Virus record (IMG/VR): IMGVR_UViG_3300023175_000005
Location: 124,001-188,000 of that record
Strand: one strand, 5' to 3'
DNA: 64,000 bases
Below are positions 15,049 to 63,620 of this stretch, piece by piece. Position numbers and translations under genes: made by a program. The notes beneath the pieces were generated by a model. That model did not search any database and was not told the origin of the DNA. It saw only the letters and a program-made list of their open reading frames with translations. Position 1 is the stretch's first letter, and each line of letters begins with the position of its first letter.

Positions 15049-15976
15049 AATACTAGACTATGACATTATCTATCTTAGTTATGACGAACCTAATGCTGAA
15101 AAAAACTATGCAGATTTGTGTAGGAAAATTCCTTGGGCTAAACGTGTACACGGTGTAGACGGAAGTGATGCAGCACACAAGGCATGTGCAGAACTTTCAG
15201 AGACGGATAGATTTATTACTATCGATGGCGATAATATTATTGATTCTGAGTTTCTTACAAAAGAATATGATTTAGAAACACACGAAGACATGCACTGGAA
15301 TCGTGATATAAAGTTTGAAGACTGTGTAGTAAGTTGGAGTGCTAGAAATACAATTAACGGACTAATGTACGGTAACGGCGGTATTAAATGCTGGCCTAAA
15401 GATAAAGTGTTAAACATGCGTACACACGAAAATGCAGATCCTAATAATGCACATGCTCAAGTTGATTTTTGTTGGGACTTAGAATATATTCAAATGAATG
15501 CGTGTTATAGCGAAATTATGAATAATGCTACTCCGCAGCAAGCATGGCGTGCTGGATTTAGAGAAGGTGTCAAAATGGCACTTGACAGAGGTATGAAACC
15601 TACTTTGAATGATTTTAAACGTAATCATTGGAAGAACTTGCATCGTTTGTATATTTGGCTAATGATAGGCGCTGATGTAGAAAATGGTAAATGGGCTATT
15701 TACGGCGCAAGAGAAGGTCTTTATAAAACAATGTGTACGGATTGGGACTTTGTAAATGTTCGTGATTTTAAATGGTTAAATGAATATTGGGCAAATGAAG
15801 TTGAATCTAAAGTATCTTTAGAAGGACTTGAAGATTCAATTGAGGAATATGGTATTAAACTAATTAACGAACTCGATTTACCTATTGCTGAAGAATGCTT
15901 AACTGCACAACAAAGTAATTTTTTCAAAACAGTATATCAAAATCCGGGTAGAACTGCTGGACAACAATTTATATGA
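15035..15976 (+). CDS. GT-A-like glycosyltransferase
   Basis: DIIYLSYDEPNA..N, RVHGV.G...AH..., FITIDGDN (DxD), YG.GG.K and AW.A.FRE..K. Clear paralogue of the C-terminal domain of 31720-34284. Confidence 0.6.
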   Translation: MSKFKILDYDIIYLSYDEPNAEKNYADLCRKIPWAKRVHGVDGSDAAHKACAELSETDRFITIDGDNIIDSEFLTKEYDLETHEDMHWNRDIKFEDCVVSWSARNTINGLMYGNGGIKCWPKDKVLNMRTHENADPNNAHAQVDFCWDLEYIQMNACYSEIMNNATPQQAWRAGFREGVKMALDRGMKPTLNDFKRNHWKNLHRLYIWLMIGADVENGKWAIYGAREGLYKTMCTDWDFVNVRDFKWLNEYWANEVESKVSLEGLEDSIEEYGIKLINELDLPIAEECLTAQQSNFFKTVYQNPGRTAGQQFI

Positions 15977-17355
15977 AATCAGAAACAGATAGAATTAAAG
16001 AAGCCGCTAGTATAATGGAGGATGTAAGTCCGACATTCTGTTTGGCTAAGTGGCATCATACTACAATTTATTTACACACAGGTGATACACACAGTTGCTA
16101 TCATCCGTCGCCGCATAAGATTGATTTAGAAGAAATTAAAAACAATCCTAGTGCATTGCACAATACACTTACAAAGAAAAAAGAACGTGCAAAAATGCTT
16201 GTAGGTGAAAAACCTAAAGGCTGTACCTATTGCTGGAATGTCGAAGCACTAGGAGATGATCATATTTCTGATAGAAACATTCGTAATGAAAGTATTTACA
16301 AGCCTGAGCGATTACAAGAAATTGTAGATTCGCCTTGGGATTTTGACGTAAATCCAGAATATATCGAAATTGCATTTAGTAATGAATGCAATTTTAAATG
16401 TGGATATTGTTCACCTATGGCAAGTAGTAGCTTTTATAACGAAGTCAAAAAACATGGTCCGTATGATATGGTTAAAAATCATCGATGCGATGTTGATTGG
16501 TTTCAGCCTATGGAAGAAGGATCAAATCCTTACGTAGATGCATGGTGGAAATGGTGGCCTGAAGTAAGTAAGACACTAAACATTTTACGCATTACAGGCG
16601 GTGAGCCTCTTATGCATAAAAGCACATGGCGTATATTTGACGAACTTAAAGAAAATCCACGTCCTCATATTGAACTTAACCTCAATAGTAACATGGGTTT
16701 AAGTCCACGCATTGTGTCTAAGTTTGCCGATAATGTAAAAGAACTTTTAGAAGGTAACAAAATTAAAAAGTTTAAAGTATATTCTAGTATAGATACATTT
16801 GATAATCGTGCAGAATATCTTCGCACAGGTTTAGATGTAAATCTTTGGGAAAGTAATATGAAAAACTTTTTAAATATTACTGGCTCCGATTTAACAATCA
16901 TGTGTACGTTTAATATTCTTAGTGTTACAAGTTTTAATTTATTCCTACAAAAAGTTTTAGATTGGCGTAAAGAATTTTATGATCCTAAGCGTAGACGTAT
17001 TAGATTTGATACACCTTATCTAAAAGAACCGTTACAATATGATATGCATATTTTACCTAAGGATGAATTTTTGCCTTACATGGATAAAATTTTACAATTT
17101 ATTAATGACAATAGAGACGACAAAGACACTACGAAATTTAGTGATTTAGAATATGAACGTTTTCGTAGAGTAAGAAATTATTTTGCAAATGTTAACTATG
17201 ACGAACCGAGAGTAAAAGAAGGCAGAGCAGATTTTTACAATTGGTTTAATGAATATGATGTTAGAAGAAACGTTAATTTTTTAGAAACATTTCCTGAGAT
17301 GGAAGGGTTTTATAATTTATGTAAGCAAACTAAGGATGAACTAGAAGTTGTCTAA
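15973..17355 (+). CDS. Radical SAM protein with N-terminal twitch-like Fe-S domain
   Basis: CNFKCGYC and TGGEPL. N-terminal C.AKW...G.THSCYH...C.YCW. Confidence 0.85.
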   Translation: MKSETDRIKEAASIMEDVSPTFCLAKWHHTTIYLHTGDTHSCYHPSPHKIDLEEIKNNPSALHNTLTKKKERAKMLVGEKPKGCTYCWNVEALGDDHISDRNIRNESIYKPERLQEIVDSPWDFDVNPEYIEIAFSNECNFKCGYCSPMASSSFYNEVKKHGPYDMVKNHRCDVDWFQPMEEGSNPYVDAWWKWWPEVSKTLNILRITGGEPLMHKSTWRIFDELKENPRPHIELNLNSNMGLSPRIVSKFADNVKELLEGNKIKKFKVYSSIDTFDNRAEYLRTGLDVNLWESNMKNFLNITGSDLTIMCTFNILSVTSFNLFLQKVLDWRKEFYDPKRRRIRFDTPYLKEPLQYDMHILPKDEFLPYMDKILQFINDNRDDKDTTKFSDLEYERFRRVRNYFANVNYDEPRVKEGRADFYNWFNEYDVRRNVNFLETFPEMEGFYNLCKQTKDELEVV

Positions 17356-18190
17356 TTTGTTTTGTTACGGGTGCAGTTTTACAAATTACAGTTGGCCTAT
17401 GTATCCTGAATACTTGGCACAGGAGTTTGATAAAACATTTAATTGTGGATTATCTGGTTTAGGTAATTTTGCAATATATCATAGATTACTAGGCACTGTT
17501 TTAGAAAACAAAATTAAAGAAAATGATACTGTAATTGTTCAGTGGTCAGAGCCATCAAGGCATGATTACCTTGACAAAGAAGAAGAATGGTCTAATATTG
17601 GCGGCGGCTTAGCCTTAGAACTAACTGCAAAAAGATTAGATCATATTATATCTCATAGTTCGTCTTACGTTAAAACTTTGACATATATGTTTCATACAGT
17701 TAACTTACTTGAATCTTTAAAAGTTAACTGGACTTTTCTTTTTCTTACACCAGATGCAATGGCACACCTAAGTATTCAAAGAGGTAAACATATAGATTTA
17801 GCAGGACATCAAAAACGCATAGCACAAAATATGACGAACAAAGTTAACAAGTATCGTCATAAGTTTATCGAGTTACCATTAATGCATCACTTTAATCATA
17901 AAGATCCTGTGTTTATGACAAATCATGGTGGCAATTGGTGGGATGACCATCCTAGACCTAAATCAACATATAAATTTGTAAAGGAAGTTTTAGCACCAAA
18001 ATTACAAATTAATACTAATAATATAACTAGTTACAACAAATATGTTTGTAACAGAATATTTGTACCTGTAAAAGAAAGAACATACAATCAAGAATTTATG
18101 ATTGAAGCAATGCGTGAGTTACCTGACAATCTCAAGTATAGTTATGATATAAGTGAATTAATAAATGAAACAATTGATATGGGCATATAA
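17348..18190 (+). CDS. SGNH/GDSL-like hydrolase or acyltransferase
   Basis: GCSFT (block I), G.GN (block II), QWS..R.D and DDHP (block V). TTG start. Confidence 0.55.
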   Translation: MSNLFCYGCSFTNYSWPMYPEYLAQEFDKTFNCGLSGLGNFAIYHRLLGTVLENKIKENDTVIVQWSEPSRHDYLDKEEEWSNIGGGLALELTAKRLDHIISHSSSYVKTLTYMFHTVNLLESLKVNWTFLFLTPDAMAHLSIQRGKHIDLAGHQKRIAQNMTNKVNKYRHKFIELPLMHHFNHKDPVFMTNHGGNWWDDHPRPKSTYKFVKEVLAPKLQINTNNITSYNKYVCNRIFVPVKERTYNQEFMIEAMRELPDNLKYSYDISELINETIDMGI

Positions 18191-19472
18191 TTGGATTGGG
18201 CCACTAGGTCCTTTAAATAACCATAAGATACCAGATGTATATGATCTGGCTAAGCGCATTGACGACATTGATGTTAAGTTTAGCGATGCAACAATGGAGC
18301 ATGATCCTGCTGTTATGGAGATAGGAAATTTTGTACCTTGCAAAATTATTCCATCTTCCGAGATAAAAGATATAGGGGATAGCAAATTTTTCTATGAAGT
18401 TATTTTAAGTCCTAACTTAAATTACATGTCTATCACAATGGATATGTTTTGCGGATTTTTACAAAGAACGCCTATTCCTGGCGAGGTTTGGGATAAAATT
18501 TACAATGGTAACGGATATCTATTTGTAAACTGTAGATATGAAAGTTTTGTTACGCATAGAGATTTTCAAACATTACATGATTATTTTAATAGTCAAGGTG
18601 TGCCCTTGAACAAAGTTATCTATGCAACAAACTGTGCAAATATACAAACTATTTACGACAAGTACTGTTTACAAGCAGGTGTAGGCGAAGATAAATTAAA
18701 TGTCGAATATATGGGTTTGTATATACAAATTACAAAAGACATTTTACGTGATGAAGTTTATGAAAGTCGTGTTGACTTGGGCAAACAAGATAGATTGTTT
18801 TTAAATTTTAACAGACGTAGTCATGAACATCGTATGTTGCTGTTATTGCAAATGATTAAAAATGATATGCTAGATGACTGTCATATGAGTTTTGACAGAC
18901 ATGGAGGTGTTAATAGACCATTTGAACATTTTATATACGATTTTGAGAGAACTTCTTCAAAATATAATTTAGAATTTGAAAGAGAAGATTTTGAAAATTT
19001 ATGGGACGATTTGCCTTTTGTGCTAGACAGTAAACATTTTGACAGATTTCCTGTAGAAGAACACTTAATGGATACTGCTGAATGGTATGATCGAACATAT
19101 ATTCATCTTGCAAGCGAAACAAATTTTGAAAATAATGTAATTCATTTGACAGAAAAAACAATGAAGCCAATTATATTCAAACAACCATTTATTATTGTTG
19201 GCCCTGCGTTTACACTTCAGTATCTTAAAAAATTAGGATTTAAAACTTTTGATGCTTGGTGGGACGAAAGTTATGATGAAACACTAAATGGGAAAGATAG
19301 AATGCAAGCAATTATAAAAGTATGTAAAGATATCAAGTCTTGGCCTAAACAAAAATTAAAACAGTTATATACACAAACACATGAGATACGAGAATACAAT
19401 ATTCAACATTTTAAAAATTTAAAACCTGTAGAACTATTAGATCTTGTTGAAAAATATGGAGCAGACATATGA
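18165..19472 (+). CDS. Putative glycosyltransferase, GT10 (fucosyltransferase)-like C-terminal motif
   Basis: FL.FNRR..HR...Y......ET......LTEKT.KP....PF...G......LK.LGF.TF....DESYD resembles GT10 motif II (Y.F....EN.....Y.TEK). Confidence 0.5.
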   Translation: MKQLIWAYNWIGPLGPLNNHKIPDVYDLAKRIDDIDVKFSDATMEHDPAVMEIGNFVPCKIIPSSEIKDIGDSKFFYEVILSPNLNYMSITMDMFCGFLQRTPIPGEVWDKIYNGNGYLFVNCRYESFVTHRDFQTLHDYFNSQGVPLNKVIYATNCANIQTIYDKYCLQAGVGEDKLNVEYMGLYIQITKDILRDEVYESRVDLGKQDRLFLNFNRRSHEHRMLLLLQMIKNDMLDDCHMSFDRHGGVNRPFEHFIYDFERTSSKYNLEFEREDFENLWDDLPFVLDSKHFDRFPVEEHLMDTAEWYDRTYIHLASETNFENNVIHLTEKTMKPIIFKQPFIIVGPAFTLQYLKKLGFKTFDAWWDESYDETLNGKDRMQAIIKVCKDIKSWPKQKLKQLYTQTHEIREYNIQHFKNLKPVELLDLVEKYGADI

Positions 19473-20437
19473 GTAAGGTATTAGTATGCGGAGCCGGAGG
19501 ATTCATTGGAGTTCATTTGGTAAGAAGTTTAAAAGCACAAGGACATTATGTAATTGGTGCAGATTTAGAGTATCCTGAATTTAGCGAAACCGAATGTGAT
19601 GAATTTCATATTGTAGATTTGCGAGAACAAGCAGATGTACGTAAATTAATTACAGAAGACATTTATGAAATATATCAACTTGCTGCGGATATGGGAGGAG
19701 CAGGATATATTTTTACAGGCGATAATGATGCTGATATTATGCACAACTCTGCTATGATTAATCTTAACATTTTGAAAGAAATGGTTGTTAAAGGTGTAAA
19801 ACGTATTTTTTATAGTTCAAGTGCTTGCATGTATCCTGAACACAATCAGATGGATCCTGATAATCCTTTGTGTAGCGAAGAAAGTGCGTATCCAGCAAAT
19901 CCTGATTCTGAATATGGTTGGGAAAAATTATTCAGCGAACGCTTGTGTATGTCTTTTGAAAAGAATTATGGTATACGTGCAAGAATGTGTCGTTTTCATA
20001 ATGTGTTTGGACCAGAAAGCACATGGACTGGAGGTAAAGAAAAATCTCCCGCAGCCTTATGTAGAAAAGTTGCAATGAGCGAAGACGAAACTGTAGAAAT
20101 TTGGGGACCTGGCACACAAACAAGAAGTTTTCTTTATATCGATGAAGCTATTGAAGGCATTCATAGGATTATGGAAAGCGATTATAATCAGCCGTTAAAT
20201 CTTGGCAGTGAACGTATGATTGCTATAAATGATTTAGCACACCTAATTGCGAGTGTTAACACTAACAAAAAACTGAGAATTAATAATGTGCCAGGACCTG
20301 TTGGTGTTAATGGCAGAAACAGTCATAATAAACTTATTAAGGAAACCATTGGTTGGGCACCGCAAGACAATTTAGAATATGGCTTGCAACAAACTTATCA
20401 ATGGATACTACAACAAATTGAGAAACAAGAAAATTGA
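19469..20437 (+). CDS. gme: GDP-mannose 3,5-epimerase-like NAD-dependent epimerase
   Basis: GAGGFIG, AADMGGAGYI, YSSSACMYP, YGWEK, RFHN.FGP..TW.GGKEK.PAALCRK and QTRSF.YID are the diagnostic GME motifs, including the catalytic Cys and Lys. Confidence 0.85.
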   Translation: MSKVLVCGAGGFIGVHLVRSLKAQGHYVIGADLEYPEFSETECDEFHIVDLREQADVRKLITEDIYEIYQLAADMGGAGYIFTGDNDADIMHNSAMINLNILKEMVVKGVKRIFYSSSACMYPEHNQMDPDNPLCSEESAYPANPDSEYGWEKLFSERLCMSFEKNYGIRARMCRFHNVFGPESTWTGGKEKSPAALCRKVAMSEDETVEIWGPGTQTRSFLYIDEAIEGIHRIMESDYNQPLNLGSERMIAINDLAHLIASVNTNKKLRINNVPGPVGVNGRNSHNKLIKETIGWAPQDNLEYGLQQTYQWILQQIEKQEN

Positions 20438-21663
20438 AACTTGCTGCATACTATCATGATAAAATAGGAAATATGCACGGTGTACAGCCGTACATTTTTG
20501 ATACGTGGTTATATTCTCGAACACTGAAAAAAGCAGGTTTTGGTATAAAACAAATTAAAGATGGGTGGAACTGGCCTGGAATATATTTTGTAAGTGTTGC
20601 AGGTCATTCTAATGATTGGGGAACACATGACAATCATGTGTTAAACAATTTGCCCAGCGAAGTTGCTAATGCAGTTCGTAGAGGAAAAATTAAAATTGTA
20701 ATTGATAATTCGTCTGAAGGTATGAATATGATATTTCCTGGATGTGATGGGTTTTATAATATGCACGAAATAATGGAAGAAAATGATTTTCATAAAAATA
20801 GTGTTATACTTATGGACGGCAATGCAGATTTCTCTACAAATTATTTAACATGGTGTAACAGAAATTGGGATATACCGTTGTTTGCACATGTTCATAGTTT
20901 TACGCATACCTTTTATTTCGATAATAGAATACCACAAAGCGCACTAGTTATAAATGCTATTAAAAATAAAGATTCCAAAGATTTCCTTAGCATGAATAGA
21001 AATACAAGACCATCAAGGCTGGAGCATTTATTTTGGTTGTTAGATACAGGTTATGTAAGCAAGGGACTTGTAAGTGGAAGTTTACCGCAAAAAGAACAAG
21101 TAGGTGCGCCTAGTAGAATTACACTACAGGATGACAATTTATGGAATAAAACCTTGCTCAAAGGTTTGCCTTTAGACATAGATGGCGTAGATTGTAAAAG
21201 TGACCCTGACAAAGATGCCACTATTTTTAATCATGCCCTTTATGAAAATAGTTTGCTCAGTGTGGTTACAGAAACTGCATTTGCAGAAGAAGGGATGTTT
21301 ATTACAGAAAAAGTAATGAAACCCATTGCAGCAGGACATCCTTTTATGATATTAGGACAATTTAGAGTCTTAAAATATCTAAGAAGTTTAGGTTATAAAA
21401 CTGACTTTGAAGGCATAGATCAAAGTTACGATGAGATTTTAAATCCTAACGAAAGATTCCAAGCATTTCATAAAAGTTTAGAAAATTGGATTAAATTGAC
21501 AAGAGCACAAAAAGAAGATATAATTATGGAAAATCTAAATAAGATTACATATAATCAAAATTTATTTAGATCTACAAATTATAATAGAGATACTGGATTG
21601 CGACTCATGACAACTGTTCAAAATCTTTTTAACAATAAATATACTATCAATGAAAAAAATTAG
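20434..21663 (+). CDS. Putative glycosyltransferase, GT10-like TEK family
   Basis: FLSMNR..R..R, Y..S..SVVTET......FITEK..KPI..GHPF...G and DQSYD. Paralogue of 18165. Confidence 0.5.
   Translation: MKLAAYYHDKIGNMHGVQPYIFDTWLYSRTLKKAGFGIKQIKDGWNWPGIYFVSVAGHSNDWGTHDNHVLNNLPSEVANAVRRGKIKIVIDNSSEGMNMIFPGCDGFYNMHEIMEENDFHKNSVILMDGNADFSTNYLTWCNRNWDIPLFAHVHSFTHTFYFDNRIPQSALVINAIKNKDSKDFLSMNRNTRPSRLEHLFWLLDTGYVSKGLVSGSLPQKEQVGAPSRITLQDDNLWNKTLLKGLPLDIDGVDCKSDPDKDATIFNHALYENSLLSVVTETAFAEEGMFITEKVMKPIAAGHPFMILGQFRVLKYLRSLGYKTDFEGIDQSYDEILNPNERFQAFHKSLENWIKLTRAQKEDIIMENLNKITYNQNLFRSTNYNRDTGLRLMTTVQNLFNNKYTINEKN
21636..21641 (+). promoter_or_regulatory. Possible late promoter TAAATA close to the start of the B12-radical SAM gene
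   Basis: TAAATATACTA (identical to 10195-10205) ends just before ATG 21650, with no obvious SD sequence. Confidence 0.35.
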
Positions 21664-26891: not shown

Positions 26892-26898
26892 ATATTGC

Positions 26899-30178: not shown

Positions 30179-30196
30179 TTATAAAAAGGATTTCGT

Positions 30197-35179: not shown

Positions 35180-35393
35180 GTTTACAACTAGACAGTTGCA
35201 ATTAGAATGTGCAAGAGCACTGAGCACAATGCAAGCAACTAATAACAACATATGGCAGTTTAACAAAGAAGCACACCATAACAGTTGGAATTGGTATTGT
35301 GCTGTCATACACTGGTATATTGAACAGTATGGTGATTTACCTAGTAAAGTCGGCCCTGGCAAGGATGTGGAGTTAGTTTACGATAATGTATAA
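35166..35393 (+). CDS. Small hypothetical protein (75 aa, Trp/Tyr/His-rich)
   Basis: Exactly fills the gap between two genes, overlapping both; TTG start. Confidence 0.55.
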   Translation: MDLSKFTTRQLQLECARALSTMQATNNNIWQFNKEAHHNSWNWYCAVIHWYIEQYGDLPSKVGPGKDVELVYDNV

Positions 35394-56957: not shown

Positions 56958-57703
56958 CCCTTAACAAAAAAATGTTTATTGATTTAGACGAAATTATACA
57001 AGTTGAAAAGTGTCCAGATATAACAGATATGATTGTGGATAGTGTGAATCATATCAGACACAACTGTAATATTAGAACTTTTGATCTCAAAGGAAATCAA
57101 ATTAAAGATGCTTGGTATGCAAAACAGATATTAGACTGTGACCTTAAAGATAATAAAAAAATATTACAAGCAGAACTAAAACATGGTGTTAGAAGTCCTT
57201 ACTATGTATTAGCATTAAGAGAAGGTGGTCATGATAGTTATGTCTACGATTCGATAAACACAGATGATAATGTGTGGAAGAAGATAAAGTGGAAAGAAGA
57301 TTTAAAAGACACTTTTGCCCCTCTAATAGAATATATAGAATCTTTACCTTTAGATAGAATAGGTCATTGTAGTTTTTTTATAAACAGACCAGACATTATT
57401 CCTTGGTATCATGTCGATAGTGGCACAGACGACGAACTAGAAACGTGGAAACCGAAACCACACAGAGAAGAGTTTATATGGATAAACTTTAGCTCGGACA
57501 AAACATTTTACGTCTTAGACGAAAAGGTACCTGTTCCAATAACATCTAGAAGTGCTTTTTTTAACACAAACAACTATCATGGATCGCACGAAAGCACACC
57601 GAGGTATTCTTTCAGTTTACGTATTGAATGCGTTTTTTCGGAAAAATTAAGACAACAAATGGGAATTGCTCATTTAGAAAGGTACTATTACGAAAATGTA
57701 TAA
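56945..57703 (+). CDS. Fe(II)-dependent oxygenase-like cupin protein
   Basis: YHVD...EFIW...FN...YHG.......S.R pattern. Confidence 0.5.
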   Translation: MEKLTLNKKMFIDLDEIIQVEKCPDITDMIVDSVNHIRHNCNIRTFDLKGNQIKDAWYAKQILDCDLKDNKKILQAELKHGVRSPYYVLALREGGHDSYVYDSINTDDNVWKKIKWKEDLKDTFAPLIEYIESLPLDRIGHCSFFINRPDIIPWYHVDSGTDDELETWKPKPHREEFIWINFSSDKTFYVLDEKVPVPITSRSAFFNTNNYHGSHESTPRYSFSLRIECVFSEKLRQQMGIAHLERYYYENV

Positions 57704-57720
57704 CAATAACGAGATATTTT

Positions 57721-58719
57721 ATGTCGACTAAATTATTTGATTCTTTTGTGCATGATTTTTTAGAATGGAGCAAAACAAGTGTTGAACCAAAAAATGCTTG
57801 TCCATTTGCAAAAACTTCACGTGTCAAAAATCAAATACAATTTTTAGATGGCAGTTCTAATTTTGATGTTATTAAAGATTGGGATTCTTCTAAAGAAATG
57901 GGTGTGGTGTATCTTGGACAAGATGTAGACAAAGAAATAATAATGGAAAAAATATATAAAGCAAGGGCTAACGATCCTAGTAAAGTTTTTTTCTACACTG
58001 CACCTATTAAAGGAGTAAAAGATAATAATCCCTTTCAGTGTATAATAATTCATAATAAAAAAGAATTTATGTTGAAACAGCGTATTTTATACGAAAAAGG
58101 AGACTATTATAAAAATTATCCAGGAGAAAAATTAGACAAATTTATAAGTGTCTATCCAATAACAAAAACAACAAAGCAAAAAATTGGAACTGCAAAGCAA
58201 GGTAAAGTATTCCAACATTATTTTAAAGGACAAGGTAGTGTTTTAGATATTGGAGGCGCAGCAGGTAATTTATTATACTATGTACCTATAGCACAATACA
58301 CATGTATAGATGTAAATGAAAAAGCAATCAAGTTAGGTAAAGAAATTTATCCTGAGCATAATTTTATACATTGGAATAGGTACAACAGATACTATAATAA
58401 AACAGGATATGCTCTTTTGGAGTTTCCAAAAGTCAGTCCACATGATTTTACATTTGTTAACAGTGTTTTTACCAGTTGTGATCACGACACTATAATGCAC
58501 ATAATGTCAAATATTCTTAAAATAACAAATAAAAAAGTTGTTTTTAGTGTATTTGATTATAACAACAAAGAATTAAAAAACAAGTTAGGAAATGCTGTAA
58601 ATTATCATGACGTATTTAAATTAAAAAATGTTTTAGAATTTGAATTTAAAATAGATTGTAAAGTTTATAATCCTTGTAGTATAGATAATAATTTTGCAGT
58701 GTTTAGTATAGAAAGGTAA
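57721..58719 (+). CDS. Fusion of a CPFA-motif domain and a class I SAM methyltransferase
   Basis: N-terminal ACPFAK..R...I homologous to 47906. C-terminal SVLDIGGAAGN, Y..IDV and SVFT. Confidence 0.65.
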   Translation: MSTKLFDSFVHDFLEWSKTSVEPKNACPFAKTSRVKNQIQFLDGSSNFDVIKDWDSSKEMGVVYLGQDVDKEIIMEKIYKARANDPSKVFFYTAPIKGVKDNNPFQCIIIHNKKEFMLKQRILYEKGDYYKNYPGEKLDKFISVYPITKTTKQKIGTAKQGKVFQHYFKGQGSVLDIGGAAGNLLYYVPIAQYTCIDVNEKAIKLGKEIYPEHNFIHWNRYNRYYNKTGYALLEFPKVSPHDFTFVNSVFTSCDHDTIMHIMSNILKITNKKVVFSVFDYNNKELKNKLGNAVNYHDVFKLKNVLEFEFKIDCKVYNPCSIDNNFAVFSIER

Positions 58720-58721
58720 AC

Positions 58722-59639
58722 ATGTATAACAATCCTCTTAATAAATTAATTTGGGATAAAGTGCAAGAAATGTTTTATTGGAACATTGCACCAGAATCTC
58801 CAATATGCCAATTGCCGTTTACACAAGAATTTATTGACGCATGTGAACAAGAATTTTCAATGACTGTTCGTGATATGCATTATCCTATTTCCTTAGGAAA
58901 AGTTGATCAATGGTTTGGTAAACGTATGCAAGATTTTGTAAAAGAAATTGACGCACAATATCAGCACAATTATTTTGTCGGAGAAAATGGAACTAGCACA
59001 ACTGGTGTAGTAGGAACTATATATGATGTTGACGAAAAACCTATTACAAACAAATGGAATATTAGAGGACAAGCACTTGTAGACAGATTACAGGCTATGC
59101 AAAAAGAAAATCCTAATTTAACAATTTTAGATATGGGTTGCGGAGTTAACGAATACAAAAAACATTTGAATAATGTTACTGGAGTTGATCCGTATAGAGA
59201 AGAAGCAGATATTTTGTCCAAGCAAAGTGATTTTATTACGCAAGGTAAAACTTGGGATATAATCATTTGCTTTGGCCCACAGAATTGGTATACTTACGAT
59301 GAACAATTTAGAAACTTCAAAAAACTCAAAGAATGTTTGGCACCGGGCGGGTTACTTTTGTGGTCGCACGTACATCACTATTATAAAGTATTTCAGCCCG
59401 ATCATCTTTATGCGCACACTTGGATACACGGAGACATGGATCATGCTCAACGTAATAGTGCTTTTTATTTTTATGATCGCGATTGGAAATATACTTGGTA
59501 TTTCAATTGGACCGAACATGCCGTAGAAACACTTGCTAAACATGTAGGACTGTCTATTGATAAAGTAGATTATGATCATTGTAATTTATATAGACCGCCT
59601 ATGTATAGAATATTTGTGGAGATGACACATGAAAAATAG
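58722..59639 (+). CDS. Class I SAM-dependent methyltransferase with small N-terminal helical domain
   Basis: ILDMGCG.N, GVDP, D.IIC.G and L.PGG. Confidence 0.7.
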   Translation: MYNNPLNKLIWDKVQEMFYWNIAPESPICQLPFTQEFIDACEQEFSMTVRDMHYPISLGKVDQWFGKRMQDFVKEIDAQYQHNYFVGENGTSTTGVVGTIYDVDEKPITNKWNIRGQALVDRLQAMQKENPNLTILDMGCGVNEYKKHLNNVTGVDPYREEADILSKQSDFITQGKTWDIIICFGPQNWYTYDEQFRNFKKLKECLAPGGLLLWSHVHHYYKVFQPDHLYAHTWIHGDMDHAQRNSAFYFYDRDWKYTWYFNWTEHAVETLAKHVGLSIDKVDYDHCNLYRPPMYRIFVEMTHEK

Positions 59640-60198
59640 ATGGGACGTAACAGTAGCAGCGTCTAATTATCATTGGGATCCTAACGCAAACGATAGCAAT
59701 ACTATTAGAATAATAAGTAATGTGTTTGATGAATGGAATGATGAAATCGAACGTGCTATAGAATTACAAAAACCTGTTATTAGTGACGGAACAATCGAAA
59801 AGCACATATCTGCCGGAACGCACATGTATAACGGAGTTATAGTTGATACTACAGAATTTCCAATACTCGGTAGTATCGGTAAAAAACTAGGATTTGAAGA
59901 ATATAATACAAGTATTCAAACACAAACTACTGGAATGACAACTCCATTGCATATAGATTCATCTTCTGGAGATAAAGAAAGAGTTATTGTTATGCTTCAA
60001 GACTGGTACTGGGGACAAATACTTCAATTTGGTAATATAGTATTACATAATTGGAAAGCAGGGGATGTATTATATTTTAGTATCAATGGTACACCGCATA
60101 GTACAGCAAATTTAAGTCCACATAGTAGAACTATAGCAAAAATTACAGGACGCACAACAGATGCATTTGAAAAATTATTAAAGGGAGAGTCTCAGTGA
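59629..60198 (+). CDS. Fe(II)/2OG oxygenase-like cupin protein
   Basis: Q..G....LHID...V.L.DW..G...QFG......W.AGD.......PHSTAN.....R...ITG. Confidence 0.6.
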   Translation: MKNRWDVTVAASNYHWDPNANDSNTIRIISNVFDEWNDEIERAIELQKPVISDGTIEKHISAGTHMYNGVIVDTTEFPILGSIGKKLGFEEYNTSIQTQTTGMTTPLHIDSSSGDKERVIVMLQDWYWGQILQFGNIVLHNWKAGDVLYFSINGTPHSTANLSPHSRTIAKITGRTTDAFEKLLKGESQ

Positions 60199-60222
60199 AA
60201 AATAGATGGGACGTAACAGTAG
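59630..60222 (+). repeat. 27-bp exact direct repeat at the starts of the two tandem paralogues
   Basis: TGAAAAATAGATGGGACGTAACAGTAG at 59630-59656 and 60196-60222. Confidence 0.9.
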
Positions 60223-60857
60223 AACAAAGTAATTATGATTTTAATCCGTTTAGAGAAAGTGATCATGGCAAAAGCTTTAGAACAGTAGGAAATATAGAAC
60301 CTACATGGAAAGATGAAATACCTATTGCAAATGCTAATCAATACGACTTTTATTGGCCTTCGCCTGTGTCTCCAGAAGGCGACAGTTTTAATTATGACTA
60401 TGAAGAATTGCTTTGCAAGGATTGGGGTATACCTTTAGACTTTGTTGTATACAGACAGTGGACAACAACGGATGAAACACCAATACTAAACAGTCTAGCC
60501 GAACAAATCGGTTTAGAAAATGCACAAACAAATATTCAAACTCAACATACAGGAATGATGCTACATTTACATATAGATAGTTTAACTGGTTTACGAAAAG
60601 AACGTACAGATCAAACAAGTAGTAGAGCAACAGACGATGAATGGGGTAGATGCTTTGTAATGCTTGATGATTGGGCACCTGGACATATTATTCAATTTGG
60701 TAATACCTACGTACCACCTTGGCATGCAGGAGATGTAATTTGGTTTGATTGGGCAAACATACCACATAGCACTGCTAACACTGGACCATGGCCTAGAAAC
60801 ATTGCAAAAATTACAGGTAAAGTTACGCAAAGGTATAAAGAGTTTGTTGGAATCTAA
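60195..60857 (+). CDS. Fe(II)/2OG oxygenase-like cupin protein; tandem paralogue of the previous gene
   Basis: Same motifs (LHID, DW..G...QFGN, W.AGDV, PHSTAN, AKITG) and the same N-terminus KNRWDVTV; GTG start. Confidence 0.6.
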   Translation: MKNRWDVTVEQSNYDFNPFRESDHGKSFRTVGNIEPTWKDEIPIANANQYDFYWPSPVSPEGDSFNYDYEELLCKDWGIPLDFVVYRQWTTTDETPILNSLAEQIGLENAQTNIQTQHTGMMLHLHIDSLTGLRKERTDQTSSRATDDEWGRCFVMLDDWAPGHIIQFGNTYVPPWHAGDVIWFDWANIPHSTANTGPWPRNIAKITGKVTQRYKEFVGI

Positions 60858-61953
60858 ACCTAGTTGTTGGTTTGCTTATAAAGGTTTATCTGTAGATTCT
60901 ACAGGCAATCTAAATCCTTGCGGCCATAGCACTTATAAGTTTGGAAAATTTACTGACTACAACTCTTTGAATGTTGACAGAACAAATGCTATAAAAGATT
61001 TTGATCAACATGTTCCGAAAGGGTGCATTTCTTGTACAAATAGAGAAGTGAGAAACGAACAAAGTAGACGTTTATATCATTACGATTGGTTCAGTCAACA
61101 GGTAAATTTTGATATAGAATTTTTAGATATTGATATAGGTAATCTATGCAATCTCAAATGTAGAATGTGTAATCCTGGACAGTCGTCTAGTTGGATAAAA
61201 GATGGACACCTTAAAGATAAAGTTGATTTTACGTTAGACGATTTTGATAATAATAAGATTCTTGATAATATAAATGGCGATATGATAAAATTTTTATCTA
61301 GTTTAGATTCTTTAAGGTATATTATTATAAAAGGTGGAGAACCTTTTATGCATCCAAGATTCTTTGAGTTTATAGAATGTATTCCAAACAAGCATAACGT
61401 AAAATTACAGATTATTACCAATGGCACACATAAATTGACTAAAGATGAAAAGAGATTGTTTGCTAAATTTGATAAACTGAATATTTTCTTTTCAGTAGAA
61501 TCTGATGGAGAGATGTATCAATACATTAGAGGCGGAAAATTTACATTTGAAGAATCATTAGATAATTGGAAATCTTACAAAACGTTTCCTAATGCAAATG
61601 AAATTGGATGGATTTATACTGCAAACATTTATGGTATCTATAATTTTGATAGTTTACAGAGTAAAATAGAAAACTCTATTGATTTTGGACATCAAGTTCT
61701 TGATCCTATGTATTTGAATCCGTTGATTACACCTTTACATATAAAACAAAAAATATTAGAAACTACAAACTATTCTCATTGGAAAAAATATTTTGCAACT
61801 AGTGCAACAGATTTGTTTGGTATAAGCATAGACAAACAATACAAACTTTTATGCAATTTGTATTCTTACACAACAACATTAGATAATATTAGAAGACAAC
61901 ACCTTTTAGATGTAGAGCCCAGGTTTGAGTGGATTTATGAATACAACAAATAA
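60844..61953 (+). CDS. Radical SAM protein with N-terminal twitch domain
   Basis: C...Y......G...PC...C.SC...E.....S.R; CNLKCRMC; GGEPF. Start uncertain (TTG 60844/60847). Confidence 0.83.
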   Translation: MLESKPSCWFAYKGLSVDSTGNLNPCGHSTYKFGKFTDYNSLNVDRTNAIKDFDQHVPKGCISCTNREVRNEQSRRLYHYDWFSQQVNFDIEFLDIDIGNLCNLKCRMCNPGQSSSWIKDGHLKDKVDFTLDDFDNNKILDNINGDMIKFLSSLDSLRYIIIKGGEPFMHPRFFEFIECIPNKHNVKLQIITNGTHKLTKDEKRLFAKFDKLNIFFSVESDGEMYQYIRGGKFTFEESLDNWKSYKTFPNANEIGWIYTANIYGIYNFDSLQSKIENSIDFGHQVLDPMYLNPLITPLHIKQKILETTNYSHWKKYFATSATDLFGISIDKQYKLLCNLYSYTTTLDNIRRQHLLDVEPRFEWIYEYNK

Positions 61954-61972: not shown

Positions 61973-62716
61973 ATGATTGAAAAAGGCGTTACAATAGATT
62001 TACACGGAACCAAAAGAATTGGTATGAAATTGTCAGGTGGACCTGACAGTGCAATGATTCTTTATATGATTTGTAAAAAAATAACTGATGAGAATATAGA
62101 TATTGAATATATTCAACCAATTACTGCTACAGCAGATGTTAAACCATACAATATAAAATTTGCCAGAAGAGTAATTGAATGGATGCGAAATAGATATCCT
62201 AATATTGAAATCAAAGATACACATTGTGCTGTATGCAGATATGAAGAATATAATTCTCGACAAGAAGAATTAGTAAGGGATTTAATTTTAAACAGAGATA
62301 TTGATATTACATTTGCAGGAATTACAGCAAATCCTCCCGATGAAAAAGGCAGGAATTTTTGGCCTTGCAATCCTAAATACACTAGAGCAATTGAATTAGA
62401 CTTTGACGAGCATCCTGAAGACATTTCAAATGCAGATTGGAATACAAGAGCAGTTGAAAGAGACGAACCTGATGTCGAAGTTTATTGGTCTACTTGGAGA
62501 GGCAAGGACGAAAAAGTTCCAATGGTAAGACCTTTTATTAATCATGATAAAAGGAAAGTAGCAGAATTATATCATCACTACGATATTATGGAATTGTTTG
62601 ATATAACAAGATCTTGTGAAAACAGAGATGGTCCTGCGCTAAACGATTTCGAAGATCATTGCGAAACAGAATGTTGGTGGTGCTATGAACGTAGATGGGC
62701 CTTTGGGCGAGTTTAA
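61973..62716 (+). CDS. QueC-like PP-loop ATP pyrophosphatase
   Basis: LSGGPDSA PP-loop, PF...DK and TRSC...HC...CWWC.ER.WAF Zn-binding motif. Strong AGGAG RBS. Confidence 0.7.
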   Translation: MIEKGVTIDLHGTKRIGMKLSGGPDSAMILYMICKKITDENIDIEYIQPITATADVKPYNIKFARRVIEWMRNRYPNIEIKDTHCAVCRYEEYNSRQEELVRDLILNRDIDITFAGITANPPDEKGRNFWPCNPKYTRAIELDFDEHPEDISNADWNTRAVERDEPDVEVYWSTWRGKDEKVPMVRPFINHDKRKVAELYHHYDIMELFDITRSCENRDGPALNDFEDHCETECWWCYERRWAFGRV

Positions 62717-63620
62717 GTATACAGGCTGGCACATTGAACTAACAAACAGATGTCCACTAGCATGTCCTGCATGTATTAGAACTATGCACGGGCCTGGTTC
62801 TAAGTCAGACATTGATACTAAATTACTTCTCAACTTTTTGCCTAATCCTGAAAAATATGATTACATATTTTTTCAAGGTAATTTGGGAGATCCTATATAT
62901 CATCCTGATTTCCACAAAATTTCAGAACATTTTTTCCCAGCAAATGAATTACAAGTTACAACAAATGGAATGCAAACAAAAGAGTTTTGGCAAAGAGTGC
63001 TAGAAACATGGCCCGAGTCTAGTATTGTTGAACTTAGTATAGACGGCCTACAAGACACTAATAGCATATACAGAGTTAACAGTAATTGGAACAAAATACA
63101 AGAACTTTTTGAACTTATAGCAACTACTAAACGCAAATGTCAGATTATATGGAAGTATATTGTTTTTGAACACAATCATCATCAAGTTGAAGAAGCAATA
63201 GCCTTAAGTAAAAAAATAGGCATGAATGAATTTAAAATTAAAAAAAGTTGGACTATACATGATGACATGTCCAATAATGGCCAAGTTAAAGACTATTATA
63301 ATCCAGAATGGTTTGATTATGTAAAAAGAGAAACACTTGACGAATTAGCACCTTTCTGTTATACTGGAGACATGCATTATATAAATTCGCAAGGTAACTA
63401 TTATCCTTGTTGTTGGATAGATAACGACATAAGTTCTGTAGGACACATATCAGAAGGTTTAGATAGTATTAAAGATAAATTTTTAAACTTTAGTAACTTA
63501 TTAATTTGGAGTAAATGTCCTAAAGTATGCAGAAAAATGTGTTGTAAAATTAGTGATAACGATAAAGAAATGATTACACCTAACAACGTTGTTGATAGAA
63601 AAATAATAGTAAATGATTGA
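62685..63620 (+). CDS. Radical SAM protein with C-terminal SPASM/twitch domain
   Basis: CPLACPAC, GNLGDP..HP, TTNG and SIDG. C-terminal C......I...G..YPCCW...C...C...C. Confidence 0.85.
   Translation: MNVDGPLGEFKYTGWHIELTNRCPLACPACIRTMHGPGSKSDIDTKLLLNFLPNPEKYDYIFFQGNLGDPIYHPDFHKISEHFFPANELQVTTNGMQTKEFWQRVLETWPESSIVELSIDGLQDTNSIYRVNSNWNKIQELFELIATTKRKCQIIWKYIVFEHNHHQVEEAIALSKKIGMNEFKIKKSWTIHDDMSNNGQVKDYYNPEWFDYVKRETLDELAPFCYTGDMHYINSQGNYYPCCWIDNDISSVGHISEGLDSIKDKFLNFSNLLIWSKCPKVCRKMCCKISDNDKEMITPNNVVDRKIIVND

What the first reader, a model, noticed from the sequence alone, without database searches (positions are those of the whole stretch)
15973..63620. Extreme paralogous expansion: 17 radical SAM genes in several architectures
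Seen: every copy keeps CxxxCxxC. Nine have an N-terminal twitch (15973, 30197, 38167, 40391, 42806, 45059, 48381, 49441, 60844). Four have a fused C-terminal twitch/SPASM (35386, 41793, 50601, 62685), one is split (39492) and three are B12-dependent. Known: twitch/SPASM is normally C-terminal; an N-terminal-twitch family exists, is functionally uncharacterised and comes largely from uncultured marine or aquifer sequences. Inference: many such 'uncultured bacterial' members may be phage genes, with each paralogue acting on a different substrate position.
Basis: partly seen in the sequence, partly recalled or inferred. Interest (0 to 1): 0.8.

Follow-up and report, generated by a model that had tools for sequence, protein, structure and literature searches.

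The report
Radical SAM tailoring island in jumbo phage
A large marine or salt-marsh phage carries, right behind its tail-fibre genes, a 50-kb block of soluble tailoring enzymes (17 radical SAM enzymes plus sugar-building, amine-adding and oxygenase enzymes) that most likely builds an elaborate sugar decoration; such blocks have been seen in phages since 2010 but their function has never been explained.

Summary
Seventeen intact ORFs between 15973 and 63620 carry CX3CX2C and match Radical_SAM. Nine pass the NCBIfam cutoff for the N-terminal-twitch family (NF033640). Three have B12-binding domains. One is split from a stand-alone SPASM ORF. Of the four claimed C-terminal twitch/SPASM fusions, three have a twitch-like Cys pattern and 50601 has a different one.

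This is not a recent expansion. The copies share 21-35% identity, scatter across the family tree, and have their own orthologues under purifying selection (omega 0.03-0.15 for 14 of 17).

The window lies in the tail module of a jumbo myovirus of at least 256 kb, in the order baseplate hub, wedge, giant protein of about 4,800 aa, fibres, island. The island also holds about 7 glycosyltransferase-like genes, UDP-glucose dehydrogenase, an SDR epimerase, PLP aminotransferases, two StrB1-like amidinotransferases, cupin/2OG oxygenases and methyltransferases. No protein has a predicted membrane segment.

A core (fibre, GTs, N-twitch rSAM, GT) is syntenic in the cultured Ralstonia phage RsoM2USA. Campylobacter phage CP220 has an analogous module of rSAMs, an amidinotransferase and GTs, described in 2010.

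Best reading: glycan or sugar tailoring, probably of virion fibres. The substrate is unproven. The family also has genuine cellular members.

The parts
246..4112 (+). C-terminal 1288 aa of a giant virion-type ORF (at least 4608 aa, about 4.8k aa in the source contig)
   Evidence: L182:41-13867 is one ORF. It has CBM_5_12 and FG-GAP hits. A baseplate wedge and hub lie upstream.
4746..10197 (+). Three paralogous tail-fibre genes (4746-6815, 6817-8697, 8734-10197)
   Evidence: Phage tail Collar PF07484 and tail-fibre PHROGs. Paralogy shown.
10193..10200 (+). T4-type late-promoter motif TATAAATA, the only copy in the window
   Evidence: 1 found against 13.6 +/- 3.8 expected. It lies 25 nt upstream of the start of 10225.
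10225..12402 (+). Two S/T/G-rich fibre-like paralogues (10225-11112, 11131-12402); candidate acceptor proteins
   Evidence: Paralogy. Homologous to RsoM2USA ORF355, which sits just before the conserved core.
12442..15048 (+). Conserved core: small protein 12442, two GT-A-like DxD proteins (12786, 13615), unknown 14470
   Evidence: Invariant D105/D107 in A4. Syntenic with RsoM2USA ORF354-351. CP220 has two nucleotide-diphospho-sugar transferases in the same kind of module. No PDB sequence hit.
15035..15976 (+). GT2-like protein paired with an N-twitch rSAM
   Evidence: Atlas clusters named 'Glycosyltransferase 2-like', score 0.98. 47% identical to RsoM2USA ORF350. Paralogue of the C-terminus of 31720.
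15973..17355 (+). N-terminal-twitch radical SAM
   Evidence: NF033640 316 bits. omega 0.046. Same clade as 30197 and 35% identical to RsoM2USA ORF349.
17348..18190 (+). SGNH/GDSL-like protein (weak)
   Evidence: Aligned with the 29254 family; invariant G-x-S. PDB GDSL hits at E 0.002-0.05.
18165..19472 (+). GT-B-fold glycosyltransferase-like protein
   Evidence: AF2 model with pLDDT 76. All top Foldseek PDB hits are GT-B enzymes, at low TM of 0.3-0.38. Nearest Pfam-named atlas cluster is Glyco_transf_10.
19469..20437 (+). NAD-dependent NDP-sugar epimerase/dehydratase (SDR)
   Evidence: PF01370 at 1.4e-42.
20434..21663 (+). GT-B-like paralogue of 18165
   Evidence: blastp 4e-15 to 18165. Shared invariant E-K...P...G C-terminal motif in A3.
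21650..23614 (+). B12-binding radical SAM (class B, methyltransferase-like)
   Evidence: PF02310 and PF04055 above cutoffs. Best NCBIfam match is the KedN5 family, below cutoff. omega 0.08.
23554..25719 (+). 721-aa protein with GT-B-like regions
   Evidence: blastp to 18165 and 20434.
25716..26891 (+). UDP-glucose/GDP-mannose 6-dehydrogenase
   Evidence: PF03721 and PF00984.
26863..27639 (+). 2OG-Fe(II) oxygenase
   Evidence: PF13640 at 8.7e-13.
27545..28267 (+). Short DegT/DnrJ/EryC1-type PLP aminotransferase
   Evidence: PF01041 at 2.4e-18. Length is conserved in orthologues; omega 0.1.
28245..29303 (+). Amidinotransferase (StrB1-like)
   Evidence: Family profile A11 against PDB: inosamine-phosphate amidinotransferase 1bwd at E 8e-115 over the full length. 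Invariant His-Cys.
29254..30177 (+). SGNH/GDSL-like protein (weak)
30197..31720 (+). N-terminal-twitch radical SAM
   Evidence: NF033640 302 bits. omega 0.034.
31720..35179 (+). 854-aa protein with a GT2-like C-terminus (31720-34284), and conserved unknown 34271-35179
   Evidence: Homologous to RsoM2USA ORF348 and ORF347. No PDB hit for 34271.
35386..36453 (+). Radical SAM with a C-terminal Cys-rich (twitch/SPASM-like) domain
   Evidence: PF04055. Cys pattern C255-x18-CC-x55-Cx7Cx3C. omega 0.086.
36450..37175 (+). DUF6071 protein (N-terminus resembles GDSL, by eye)
   Evidence: PF19547. Sequence.
38167..39492 (+). N-terminal-twitch radical SAM
   Evidence: NF033640 234 bits. omega 0.042.
39492..40416 (+). 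Split enzyme: rSAM core (39492-40157) plus an overlapping stand-alone SPASM ORF (40102-40416)
   Evidence: Both are conserved in L004.
40391..41815 (+). N-terminal-twitch radical SAM
   Evidence: NF033640 416 bits. omega 0.065 from 25 orthologues.
41793..42809 (+). Radical SAM with a C-terminal twitch
   Evidence: SPASM 20.9 bits. C246-x18-CC-x62-CxxC. No orthologue at 60-99.7% identity was available.
42785..43993 (+). N-terminal-twitch radical SAM
   Evidence: NF033640 253 bits. omega 0.043.
44020..45066 (+). Second amidinotransferase
   Evidence: Paralogue of 28245 at 7e-28. Member of A11.
45059..46279 (+). N-terminal-twitch radical SAM (lacks the second twitch Cys)
   Evidence: NF033640 227 bits. 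Alignment A7. omega 0.033.
46242..47198 (+). PLP-dependent aminotransferase-like protein
   Evidence: Profile A12 against PDB: aminotransferases at E 2.4e-4 and 8.4e-4. Invariant D174, S199, K202.
48381..50604 (+). Two N-terminal-twitch radical SAMs (48381-49454, 49441-50604)
   Evidence: NF033640 229 and 404 bits. AF2 model of 49441 has pLDDT 96.
50601..51779 (+). Radical SAM with a different C-terminal 5-Cys region
   Evidence: PF04055 59 bits. Cys pattern. omega 0.087.
51751..53604 (+). B12-binding radical SAM
53597..54184 (+). Redoxin/peroxiredoxin
   Evidence: PF08534.
54087..55300 (+). Two cupin-like paralogues with an invariant GG..HxD...H triad
   Evidence: Alignment A9. Paralogy.
55251..56957 (+). 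B12-binding radical SAM
57628..59639 (+). Two SAM-dependent methyltransferase-like genes
   Evidence: PF13847 (weak) and PF13489.
59629..60857 (+). Two Asp/Asn-beta-hydroxylase-like cupin paralogues
   Evidence: Atlas PF05118 clusters at 0.94-0.96. Paralogy at 1.5e-38.
60745..61953 (+). N-terminal-twitch radical SAM (the true start is probably 60844)
   Evidence: NF033640 176 bits, with the match starting at residue 38.
61973..62716 (+). PP-loop ATPase-like protein (weak QueC/NAD-synthase similarity)
   Evidence: Homologues accompany rSAM arrays in many loci.
62685..63620 (+). Radical SAM with a C-terminal Cys-rich twitch-like domain
   Evidence: PF04055 25.8 bits. C225-x16-CC-x34-Cx3Cx3CC.

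Best explanation
The 17 radical SAM genes belong to a roughly 50-kb island of soluble tailoring enzymes. The island is inserted in the tail-fibre module of a marine or salt-marsh jumbo myovirus and is probably expressed late with the fibres. I read it as a virus-encoded glycan assembly and tailoring line.

Proposed mechanism (inferred):
1. Host UDP-sugars are oxidised, epimerised or dehydrated by the UDP-glucose dehydrogenase and the SDR enzyme.
2. About seven GT-A-like and GT-B-like transferases assemble the sugars on a soluble acceptor, most plausibly the phage's own fibre proteins.
3. The product is then heavily edited. Twitch-type rSAMs would act as BtrN-, BlsE- or NeoN-like radical dehydrogenases, epimerases or decarboxylases on sugar C-H bonds.
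4. PLP aminotransferases and StrB1-like amidinotransferases would convert the resulting keto groups to amino and then guanidino groups.
5. B12-rSAMs would add C-methyl groups. Cupin/2OG oxygenases, SGNH enzymes and methyltransferases would add hydroxyl, acyl and methyl groups.

Shown: the gene content, the genomic position, conservation, purifying selection and cassette shuffling.
Inferred: the substrate class, the acceptor and every individual reaction.
For: Enzyme identities: UGDH, SDR, DegT and 2OG oxygenase. Amidinotransferases match StrB1 at E 8e-115. A PLP enzyme is present. One transferase has a GT-B fold. GT2-like and GT-A-like proteins carry invariant DxD motifs. Cupins are supported.

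No predicted membrane segment occurs in any of the 57 window proteins, so the acceptor is soluble.

Position: hub, wedge, giant protein, fibres, island. The single TATAAATA sits just before fibre gene 10225, against 13.6 expected.

The core (fibre, GT-A x2, GT2, N-twitch rSAM, GT2) is syntenic in cultured phage RsoM2USA, next to virion proteins confirmed by mass spectrometry. CP220 has 5 rSAMs, an amidinotransferase and 2 nucleotide-sugar transferases between baseplate and tail-fibre genes. The DegT, rSAM and amidinotransferase trio recurs in cyanophage S-SCSM2R.

Purifying selection acts on 14 of 17 rSAMs. The best structural match of the 49441 core is the sugar-acting BlsE, at Z 13.7, though this is nearly tied with others. 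No precursor-peptide, RRE, protease or exporter family appeared among the Pfam hits.
Against: No substrate has been observed. The structural ranking does not discriminate: anSME 13.6, viperin 13.4 and SkfB 13.2 are all near the BlsE score.

SPASM/twitch rSAMs are most often peptide maturases. Cellular family members are fused to TPR, Sel1 or a subtilase, which hints at protein partners. PF13640 and PF05118 oxygenases often hydroxylate proteins.

Most GT assignments rest on motifs, a low-TM fold match and language-model neighbours; profile searches against PDB sequences found nothing. Late expression rests on one motif. The RNA evidence could be DNA carry-over.
Confidence: 0.42

Rival explanations
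1. Direct post-translational modification of virion fibre proteins, in the manner of RiPPs or proteusins. The rSAMs would epimerise, C-methylate or cross-link residues of the adjacent fibre or giant proteins. The oxygenases would hydroxylate residues, and the GTs would then glycosylate those residues.
For: SPASM/twitch rSAMs are typically peptide maturases; secondary NCBIfam hits include PapB, SkfB, AlbA and CteB-like families. The combination of B12-rSAM, 2OG oxygenase and methyltransferase recalls polytheonamide tailoring (my own knowledge). Relatives are fused to TPR, Sel1 or Peptidase_S8. Asp/Asn-hydroxylase-like and prolyl-hydroxylase-like cupins are present. The island is adjacent to fibre genes.
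Against: The nucleotide-sugar enzymes and the StrB1-like amidinotransferases point to small polyol or sugar substrates. No RRE or leader-peptide-like ORF was seen. The N-terminal position that maturases usually use for an RRE is occupied here by the twitch domain.
Confidence: 0.25
2. Remodelling of the host cell surface. The island would make unusual NDP-sugars that the host's own machinery incorporates into LPS or capsule, blocking superinfection. This was proposed for the pelagimyophage host-recognition clusters.
For: Zaragoza-Solas et al. 2020 describe fibre-linked hypervariable islands with GTs, UDP-glucose dehydrogenase and rSAM cassettes, and favour O-chain modification. The cassette content is hypervariable between related phages.
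Against: There is no membrane protein, flippase, polymerase or lipid-carrier transferase among the 57 proteins. The island is placed behind a T4-type late-promoter motif in the virion module, whereas exclusion functions are usually expressed early (my own knowledge).
Confidence: 0.15
3. Biosynthesis of a free guanidino-aminoglycoside-like small molecule during infection, for example to act on competitors or on host translation.
For: The best structural homologue of the amidinotransferases is StrB1 of streptomycin biosynthesis. DegT-type aminotransferases, twitch rSAMs (BtrN precedent) and B12-rSAMs (GenK precedent) are all aminoglycoside-pathway enzyme types (my own knowledge). The S-SCSM2R authors called the same trio 'antibiotic synthesis genes'.
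Against: No cyclitol synthase, exporter or self-resistance gene was detected. There are seven GT-like genes. The core is conserved next to a fibre gene.
Confidence: 0.1
4. DNA hypermodification, such as 7-deazaguanine chemistry or glycosylated bases.
For: A PP-loop protein shows weak QueC similarity. CP220, which has a similar rSAM module, has fully 7-deazaguanine-modified DNA. GT-B enzymes glucosylate T4 DNA (my own knowledge).
Against: No DpdA, QueD, FolE or QueE-type hits occur in the window. In CP220 the deazaguanine genes are separate from the rSAM/amidinotransferase module. The island sits in the late structural module.
Confidence: 0.04
5. Neutral accumulation of decaying duplicates.
For: None found. 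Three copies could not be tested for selection.
Against: All 17 ORFs are intact with their cluster-binding Cys. omega is 0.03-0.15 for 14 of them. GGE and other core residues are invariant across 112 family members.
Confidence: 0.01

Closest known systems
Campylobacter phages CP220/CPt10 radical-SAM module (Timms et al. 2010, PMC2853527)
   Same: These are T4-related myoviruses with 11-12 rSAM genes. They carry an interchangeable cluster of five rSAMs plus an amidinotransferase, followed by two nucleotide-diphospho-sugar transferases, between baseplate and tail-fibre genes. The amidinotransferase is 34% identical to 28245. The rSAMs resemble the window's C-terminal-twitch group. The function is unknown there too.
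   Different: CP220 has no N-terminal-twitch copies among the detectable matches and fewer rSAMs. No B12-rSAM, UGDH or SDR enzyme was seen in that stretch. A PAP2 membrane protein is present there.
Ralstonia jumbo phage RsoM2USA ORF355-347 (MG752970; PMC8504454)
   Same: The gene order matches: fibre-like, small protein, GT-A-like x2, unknown, GT2-like, N-twitch rSAM, GT2-like, homologue of 34271. Identity is 28-47%. The block lies downstream of the baseplate wedge and a giant virion protein.
   Different: There is only one rSAM in this block, and all genes are annotated as hypothetical. It is a soil phage of a plant pathogen. It lacks the roughly 13-kb sugar-enzyme insert and the roughly 28-kb rSAM mosaic of the window.
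NCBIfam NF033640 N_Twi_rSAM (twitch domain-containing radical SAM protein)
   Same: Nine window proteins pass its cutoff over the full length.
   Different: The family is uncharacterised. The window shows it in arrays in a phage tail module, whereas other members sit on cellular chromosomes.
BtrN / BlsE / NeoN-type twitch rSAMs acting on sugars and aminocyclitols
   Same: Both have a radical SAM core plus one auxiliary-cluster (twitch) domain. BlsE is the top structural match of the 49441 core, at Z 13.7. The genomic partners (DegT aminotransferase, amidinotransferase) mirror aminoglycoside pathway logic.
   Different: In the window the twitch domain is N-terminal, not C-terminal. Sequence similarity is limited to the rSAM core. 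The structural score is essentially tied with peptide- and nucleotide-acting enzymes. No activity has been tested.
Host recognition cluster of pelagimyophages and cyanomyophages (Zaragoza-Solas 2020), and the T4-like marine genome with 12 rSAMs (Nishimura 2017)
   Same: Both describe a hypervariable island next to tail fibres and after a giant structural gene. It contains GTs, UDP-glucose dehydrogenase and 'radical SAM cassettes'.
   Different: The window's phage groups by its baseplate proteins with the Atu_ph07, PA5oct and SCTP-2-like jumbo phages, not with HTVC008M-like phages. It has more rSAMs. Its B12-dependent copies imply a host that supplies cobalamin.

Membership tests
Radical SAM superfamily (PF04055) | CX3CX2C motif binding the SAM-cleaving [4Fe-4S] cluster | tested here: met
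   Present in all 17 ORFs.
Radical SAM superfamily (PF04055) | Pfam score at or above the gathering score (29.5 bits) | tested here: inconclusive
   13 of 17 are above it. 30197 (24.7), 41793 (24.4), 42785 (29.0) and 62685 (25.8) fall just below, but with E <= 3.7e-5. Two of these four pass NF033640.
Radical SAM superfamily (PF04055) | Reductive SAM cleavage activity | not testable with these tools
   Needs anaerobic biochemistry.
NF033640 N_Twi_rSAM | Full-length HMM score at or above the curated cutoff (170 bits) | tested here: met
   Nine proteins score 176-416 bits, covering model positions about 1-398.
NF033640 N_Twi_rSAM | N-terminal four-Cys twitch domain preceding the rSAM core | tested here: met
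   C8, C76 and C79 are invariant and C26 is kept in at least 90% of 112 sequences. Pfam SPASM hits the N-terminus in 6 of the 9 copies. 45059 lacks the C26 equivalent.
Class B (cobalamin-dependent) radical SAM methyltransferases | N-terminal B12-binding domain plus rSAM core | tested here: met
   PF02310 scores 34.6-46.9 bits against a cutoff of 32.1, and PF04055 is present, in 21650, 51751 and 55251.
KedN5-family C-methyltransferase (NF033712) | Score at or above 700 bits | tested here: not met
   177-256 bits, matching the N-terminal two-thirds only.
C-terminal SPASM/twitch rSAMs | PF13186 at or above 21.5 bits, C-terminal to the core | tested here: inconclusive
   40102 (the split piece) scores 22.1 and is met. 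41793 scores 20.9. 35386, 50601 and 62685 have no hit. The Cys patterns are twitch-like in 35386, 41793 and 62685 but not in 50601. hhalign of the N-terminal against the C-terminal domains aligns only 15 columns, at probability 10%.
RiPP maturase system | Precursor peptide, RRE domain, leader protease or exporter in the cluster | tested here: not met
   None appears among the Pfam, NCBIfam or PHROG hits for the window ORFs. Small ORFs were not searched exhaustively.
Amidinotransferase (AGAT/StrB1 family) | Full-length homology and the catalytic His-Cys | tested here: met
   A11 against 1bwd gives E 8e-115 over residues 3-343. H336 and C337 are invariant.
Glycosyltransferases (GT-A / GT-B) | Recognised GT fold or family model | tested here: inconclusive
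   The model of 18165 hits only GT-B enzymes, but at TM 0.3-0.38. 15035 has 'GT2-like' atlas neighbours. DxD is invariant in A4 and A2. There are no Pfam or PDB-sequence hits.
Tail-fibre-linked hypervariable island of T4-related myoviruses | Location after the giant structural gene and the fibres; content varies between relatives | tested here: met
   The downstream boundary (neck gene) was not seen.

The most novel reading that the evidence does not exclude
Phages use arrays of N-terminal-twitch, C-terminal-twitch and B12 radical SAM enzymes, together with aminotransferase and amidinotransferase pairs, to build a hyper-edited glycan on their own tail fibres. The glycan would be guanidinylated, C-methylated and epimerised. 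The editing code would be reshuffled between phages as cassettes to retune adsorption or evade recognition. This would be a new class of virion decoration and would give the uncharacterised N_Twi_rSAM family its first function, as circularly permuted BtrN-like sugar radical enzymes.
Probability: 0.22. Interest if true: 0.85.

Novelty: new variant of a known kind. Interest (0 to 1): 0.62.

Why it matters
Radical SAM arrays in large phages were reported in 2010 (CP220/CPt10), 2017 and 2020, but no function has been assigned. The N-terminal-twitch family, with about 7,600 50%-identity clusters at E <= 1e-30, has no characterised member.

This window links both to a concrete and testable context: a fibre-adjacent module of soluble glycosyltransferases, nucleotide-sugar enzymes and amidinotransferases. 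The core of that module is present in cultured phages (RsoM2USA, CP220, S-SCSM2R).

If the product is a virion glycan, it would reveal radical chemistry in phage surface decoration and a new source of sugar-editing enzymes. If it is a peptide or a small molecule, that would be equally new for phages.

The result also warns that MAG bins from marine samples carry phage contigs that inflate the apparent 'bacterial' membership of this family.

Tried and rejected
- Megablast of window 1-20000 against cultured phages found no match.
- tblastn of 40391 against cultured phages gave only weak hits, to Vibrio K566/K567 and RsoM2USA.
- The search for related loci with the nine-paralogue alignment failed because the alignment is too divergent.
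- Profile searches against PDB sequences for the putative GT families (A2, A3, A4), for 34271 (A10) and for the cupins (A9) gave nothing significant.
- Foldseek and VIA on the high-confidence 49441 model aligned only the rSAM core. They could not separate sugar-, peptide- and nucleotide-acting relatives.
- hhalign between the N-terminal and C-terminal twitch domains was not significant.
- The sigma-70 and terminator scan was uninformative apart from one perfect consensus. No tRNAs were found.
- A recent in-situ duplication was rejected. Decay was rejected. An exclusively viral family was rejected.
- One Pfam call failed on wrong coordinates.

Full report
**Observation**

All ORFs of real size lie on the + strand. 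GC content is about 33%.

A CX3CX2C motif occurs in 17 enzyme-sized ORFs between 15973 and 63620, and once at the C-terminus of a PP-loop-like protein. All 17 match Pfam Radical_SAM. Thirteen score above the gathering score and four fall just under it.

- **B12-dependent.** Three copies carry a B12-binding domain. Their best NCBIfam match is the KedN5 family of cobalamin-dependent C-methyltransferases, far below its cutoff.
- **Split copy.** ORF 39492 is an rSAM core. It is followed by an overlapping stand-alone SPASM ORF at 40102-40416. Both pieces are conserved in a related contig.
- **C-terminal twitch/SPASM.** Of the four copies said to have a fused C-terminal domain, 41793 is just under the Pfam cutoff. 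35386 and 62685 show the same C-x16-18-CC...C pattern as the N-terminal domains. 50601 has a different five-Cys tail.

**Not a recent expansion, not decay**

The nine N-twitch copies share only 21-35% identity. I built a tree with 103 representatives of 50%-identity clusters. The window copies are scattered across it. Only 15973 with 30197, and 45059 with 60745, share well-supported clades.

Each copy has its own orthologues in other viral contigs. For 14 of the 17 rSAM genes, pairwise Nei-Gojobori omega is 0.03-0.15. Two copies (41793, 60745) had no suitable orthologue. One (62685) had no synonymous differences to work with.

The catalytic Cys residues, the GGE motif and further core residues are invariant across 112 family members.

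Fragments of the array at 99% identity or more occur in four salt-marsh metatranscriptome assemblies. DNA carry-over cannot be excluded.

**Where it sits**

The window is identical to an IMG/VR contig of 256.5 kb.

- The first window gene is the tail end of a giant ORF of at least 4,608 aa.
- Upstream of that ORF lie baseplate wedge and hub/lysozyme genes. Their closest cultured relatives are jumbo myoviruses such as Salicola SCTP-2, Agrobacterium Atu_ph07 and Pseudomonas PA5oct.
- After the giant gene come three tail-fibre paralogues, with Collar-domain and tail-fibre PHROG hits, and then two S/T/G-rich fibre-like paralogues.
- The T4 late-promoter octamer TATAAATA occurs once in 64 kb, against 13.6 +/- 3.8 expected. 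That single copy lies 25 nt upstream of the first fibre-like gene, at 10225. The heptamer ATAAATA is similarly depleted, 6 found against 46 expected.

This pattern is what one expects if the motif is a functional late promoter that is avoided elsewhere. That reading is an inference.

**What else is in the island**

Firm assignments:
- an SDR NDP-sugar epimerase/dehydratase, a UDP-glucose/GDP-mannose dehydrogenase, a 2OG oxygenase and a short DegT aminotransferase;
- a redoxin;
- one clear and one weak methyltransferase hit;
- two paralogous amidinotransferases. Their family profile matches StrB1, the inosamine-phosphate amidinotransferase of streptomycin biosynthesis, at E 8e-115 over its full length, with the catalytic His-Cys invariant.

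Weaker assignments:
- a PLP aminotransferase-like family, 46242;
- a family with a GT-B fold (18165, 20434, 23554). All of the model's top PDB matches are GT-B enzymes, at low TM, and the nearest atlas cluster with a Pfam name is GT10;
- GT2-like proteins, 15035 and the C-terminus of 31720;
- two GT-A-like proteins with an invariant DxD;
- SGNH-like proteins;
- two cupin families with invariant HxD...H, or with Asp/Asn-hydroxylase-like neighbours.

None of the 57 window proteins has a predicted transmembrane segment.

A trio recurs twice in the window: a twitch rSAM, a PLP aminotransferase and an amidinotransferase (27545-28245-30197, and 42785-44020-45059-46242). The same trio is present in cyanophage S-SCSM2R.

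**Relatives**

- **Conserved module.** An 18-gene module (12442-31720) is fully syntenic in other viral contigs at 35-76% identity.
- **Mosaic region.** The 35-63 kb part is a mosaic whose rSAM cassettes differ between otherwise related phages. Up to 13 rSAM-like ORFs occur in a single 21-kb locus.
- **RsoM2USA.** A smaller core is syntenic in the cultured Ralstonia jumbo phage RsoM2USA (ORF355-347). The core comprises a fibre-like protein, a small protein, two GT-A-like proteins, an unknown, a GT2-like protein, an N-twitch rSAM, a second GT2-like protein and a homologue of 34271. It lies downstream of the baseplate wedge and a giant virion protein confirmed by mass spectrometry.
- **CP220.** Campylobacter phage CP220 has four rSAMs, an amidinotransferase, a fifth rSAM and two nucleotide-diphospho-sugar transferases between baseplate and tail-fibre genes. 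Timms et al. described this in 2010 as an interchangeable module of unknown function, and counted 11-12 rSAMs per genome.
- **Marine genomes.** Nishimura et al. 2017 noted a T4-like marine genome with 12 rSAMs. Zaragoza-Solas et al. 2020 noted rSAM cassettes in the fibre-linked hypervariable island of pelagimyophages.

**Viral or cellular**

The family is large. A profile built from the nine copies finds 7,594 clusters at E <= 1e-30 among 1.84 billion representatives. Many of these are two- or three-unit tandem fusions.

Evidence for a viral marine branch:
- The nearest 120 relatives of 49441 are all metagenomic.
- A scan of one genome per GTDB species found ten loci, all in MAGs. The three closest are syntenic with the phage island, so they are phage contigs placed in bacterial bins.

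Evidence for genuine cellular members:
- a 909-kb contig with ParAB, SecG, a PBP and UvrA;
- a contig with trigger factor;
- MAG contigs with an outer-membrane barrel, a sulfatase and a sulfotransferase, or with TPR, Sel1 and GDSL genes.

The scans were pattern-limited and capped, so I cannot give the ratio.

**Mechanism**

The best-supported reading is a glycan or sugar tailoring line that acts on a soluble acceptor, most plausibly the adjacent fibre proteins. The chemistry I propose is inferred:

1. Twitch rSAMs abstract sugar C-H bonds. BtrN-like dehydrogenation would give a ketone. Epimerisation or decarboxylation of uronic acids are alternatives.
2. PLP aminotransferases install amines.
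3. Amidinotransferases convert the amines to guanidines.
4. B12-rSAMs C-methylate.
5. Cupins, SGNH enzymes and methyltransferases finish the product.

The structure of 49441 was modelled with high confidence (pLDDT 96). Its core aligns best with the sugar-acting enzyme BlsE, at Z 13.7. That score is nearly tied with anSME, viperin and SkfB, so it does not decide the substrate class.

The main rival is direct radical modification of the fibre proteins. It is kept alive by the general habits of SPASM/twitch enzymes, by TPR, Sel1 and subtilase fusions in relatives, and by the protein-hydroxylase-like cupins. Host-surface remodelling, a free aminoglycoside-like product and DNA modification are less likely, for the reasons given under the rival explanations.

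**Verdict**

This is a real and well-conserved feature of a kind already noticed in phages but never explained. The new elements here are:
- the dominance of the uncharacterised N-terminal-twitch family;
- the scale, 17 rSAM genes in 48 kb;
- the link to a glycosyltransferase, nucleotide-sugar and amidinotransferase context that is entirely soluble;
- a core shared with cultured phages, which makes the question experimentally tractable.

Noticed in passing
window 10193-10200; whole window: TATAAATA occurs once against 13.6 expected. ATAAATA occurs 6 times against 46 expected. This is strong avoidance of the T4 late-promoter motif, apart from one copy just upstream of fibre-like gene 10225.
   Followed up: partly
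window 42801-42807: A T7 run sits at the junction of rSAM 41793 (stop at 42807-42809) and N-twitch rSAM 42785. One metatranscriptome contig has T8. By frame arithmetic this would fuse the two ORFs into one rSAM-twitch-rSAM protein. Tandem fusions of this kind are common in the database. It could be a strain variant, polymerase slippage or an error.
   Followed up: partly
L182:41-13867 (window 1-4112 is its end): A giant ORF of at least 4,608 aa with a CBM_5_12 carbohydrate-binding hit and an FG-GAP repeat hit. It lies between the baseplate wedge gene and the tail fibres.
   Followed up: partly
L172:18363-19652 (just past the window end, about window 63613-64902): A TctA-family tripartite tricarboxylate transporter membrane subunit (Pfam E 2e-57) is encoded immediately after the last rSAM. 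This is unusual cargo for a phage, and it is the only membrane protein seen near the island.
   Followed up: no
window 21496-21524: A perfect sigma-70 consensus (TTGACA, 17 nt, TATAAT; 12 of 12) lies inside gene 20434, 126 nt upstream of B12-rSAM 21650.
   Followed up: no
window 35166-35393: The only sizeable intergenic gap (35179-35386) holds a 75-aa ORF, which the JGI gene caller annotates. It has no family hit and lies just before rSAM 35386.
   Followed up: no
window 45059-46279: This N-twitch copy lacks the second of the four twitch Cys residues (position C26 in 49441 numbering), yet it is under strong purifying selection (omega 0.033).
   Followed up: partly
L081, L082, L086 (GTDB MAG contigs): Contigs binned as Crocinitomicaceae and as a Gammaproteobacteria MAG (MED685, 108 kb) are syntenic with this phage island and its fibre-linked genes. 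They are probably phage contigs inside bacterial bins.
   Followed up: partly
window 21650, 51751, 55251: Three cobalamin-dependent enzymes in a phage imply a host that makes or imports B12. This argues against a SAR11-type host (inference from general knowledge).
   Followed up: no
L209 (Vibrio phage K566, 161.5-166 kb): A cultured 255-kb Vibrio phage carries a small cluster of three rSAM genes that are distantly related to the N-twitch copies.
   Followed up: no
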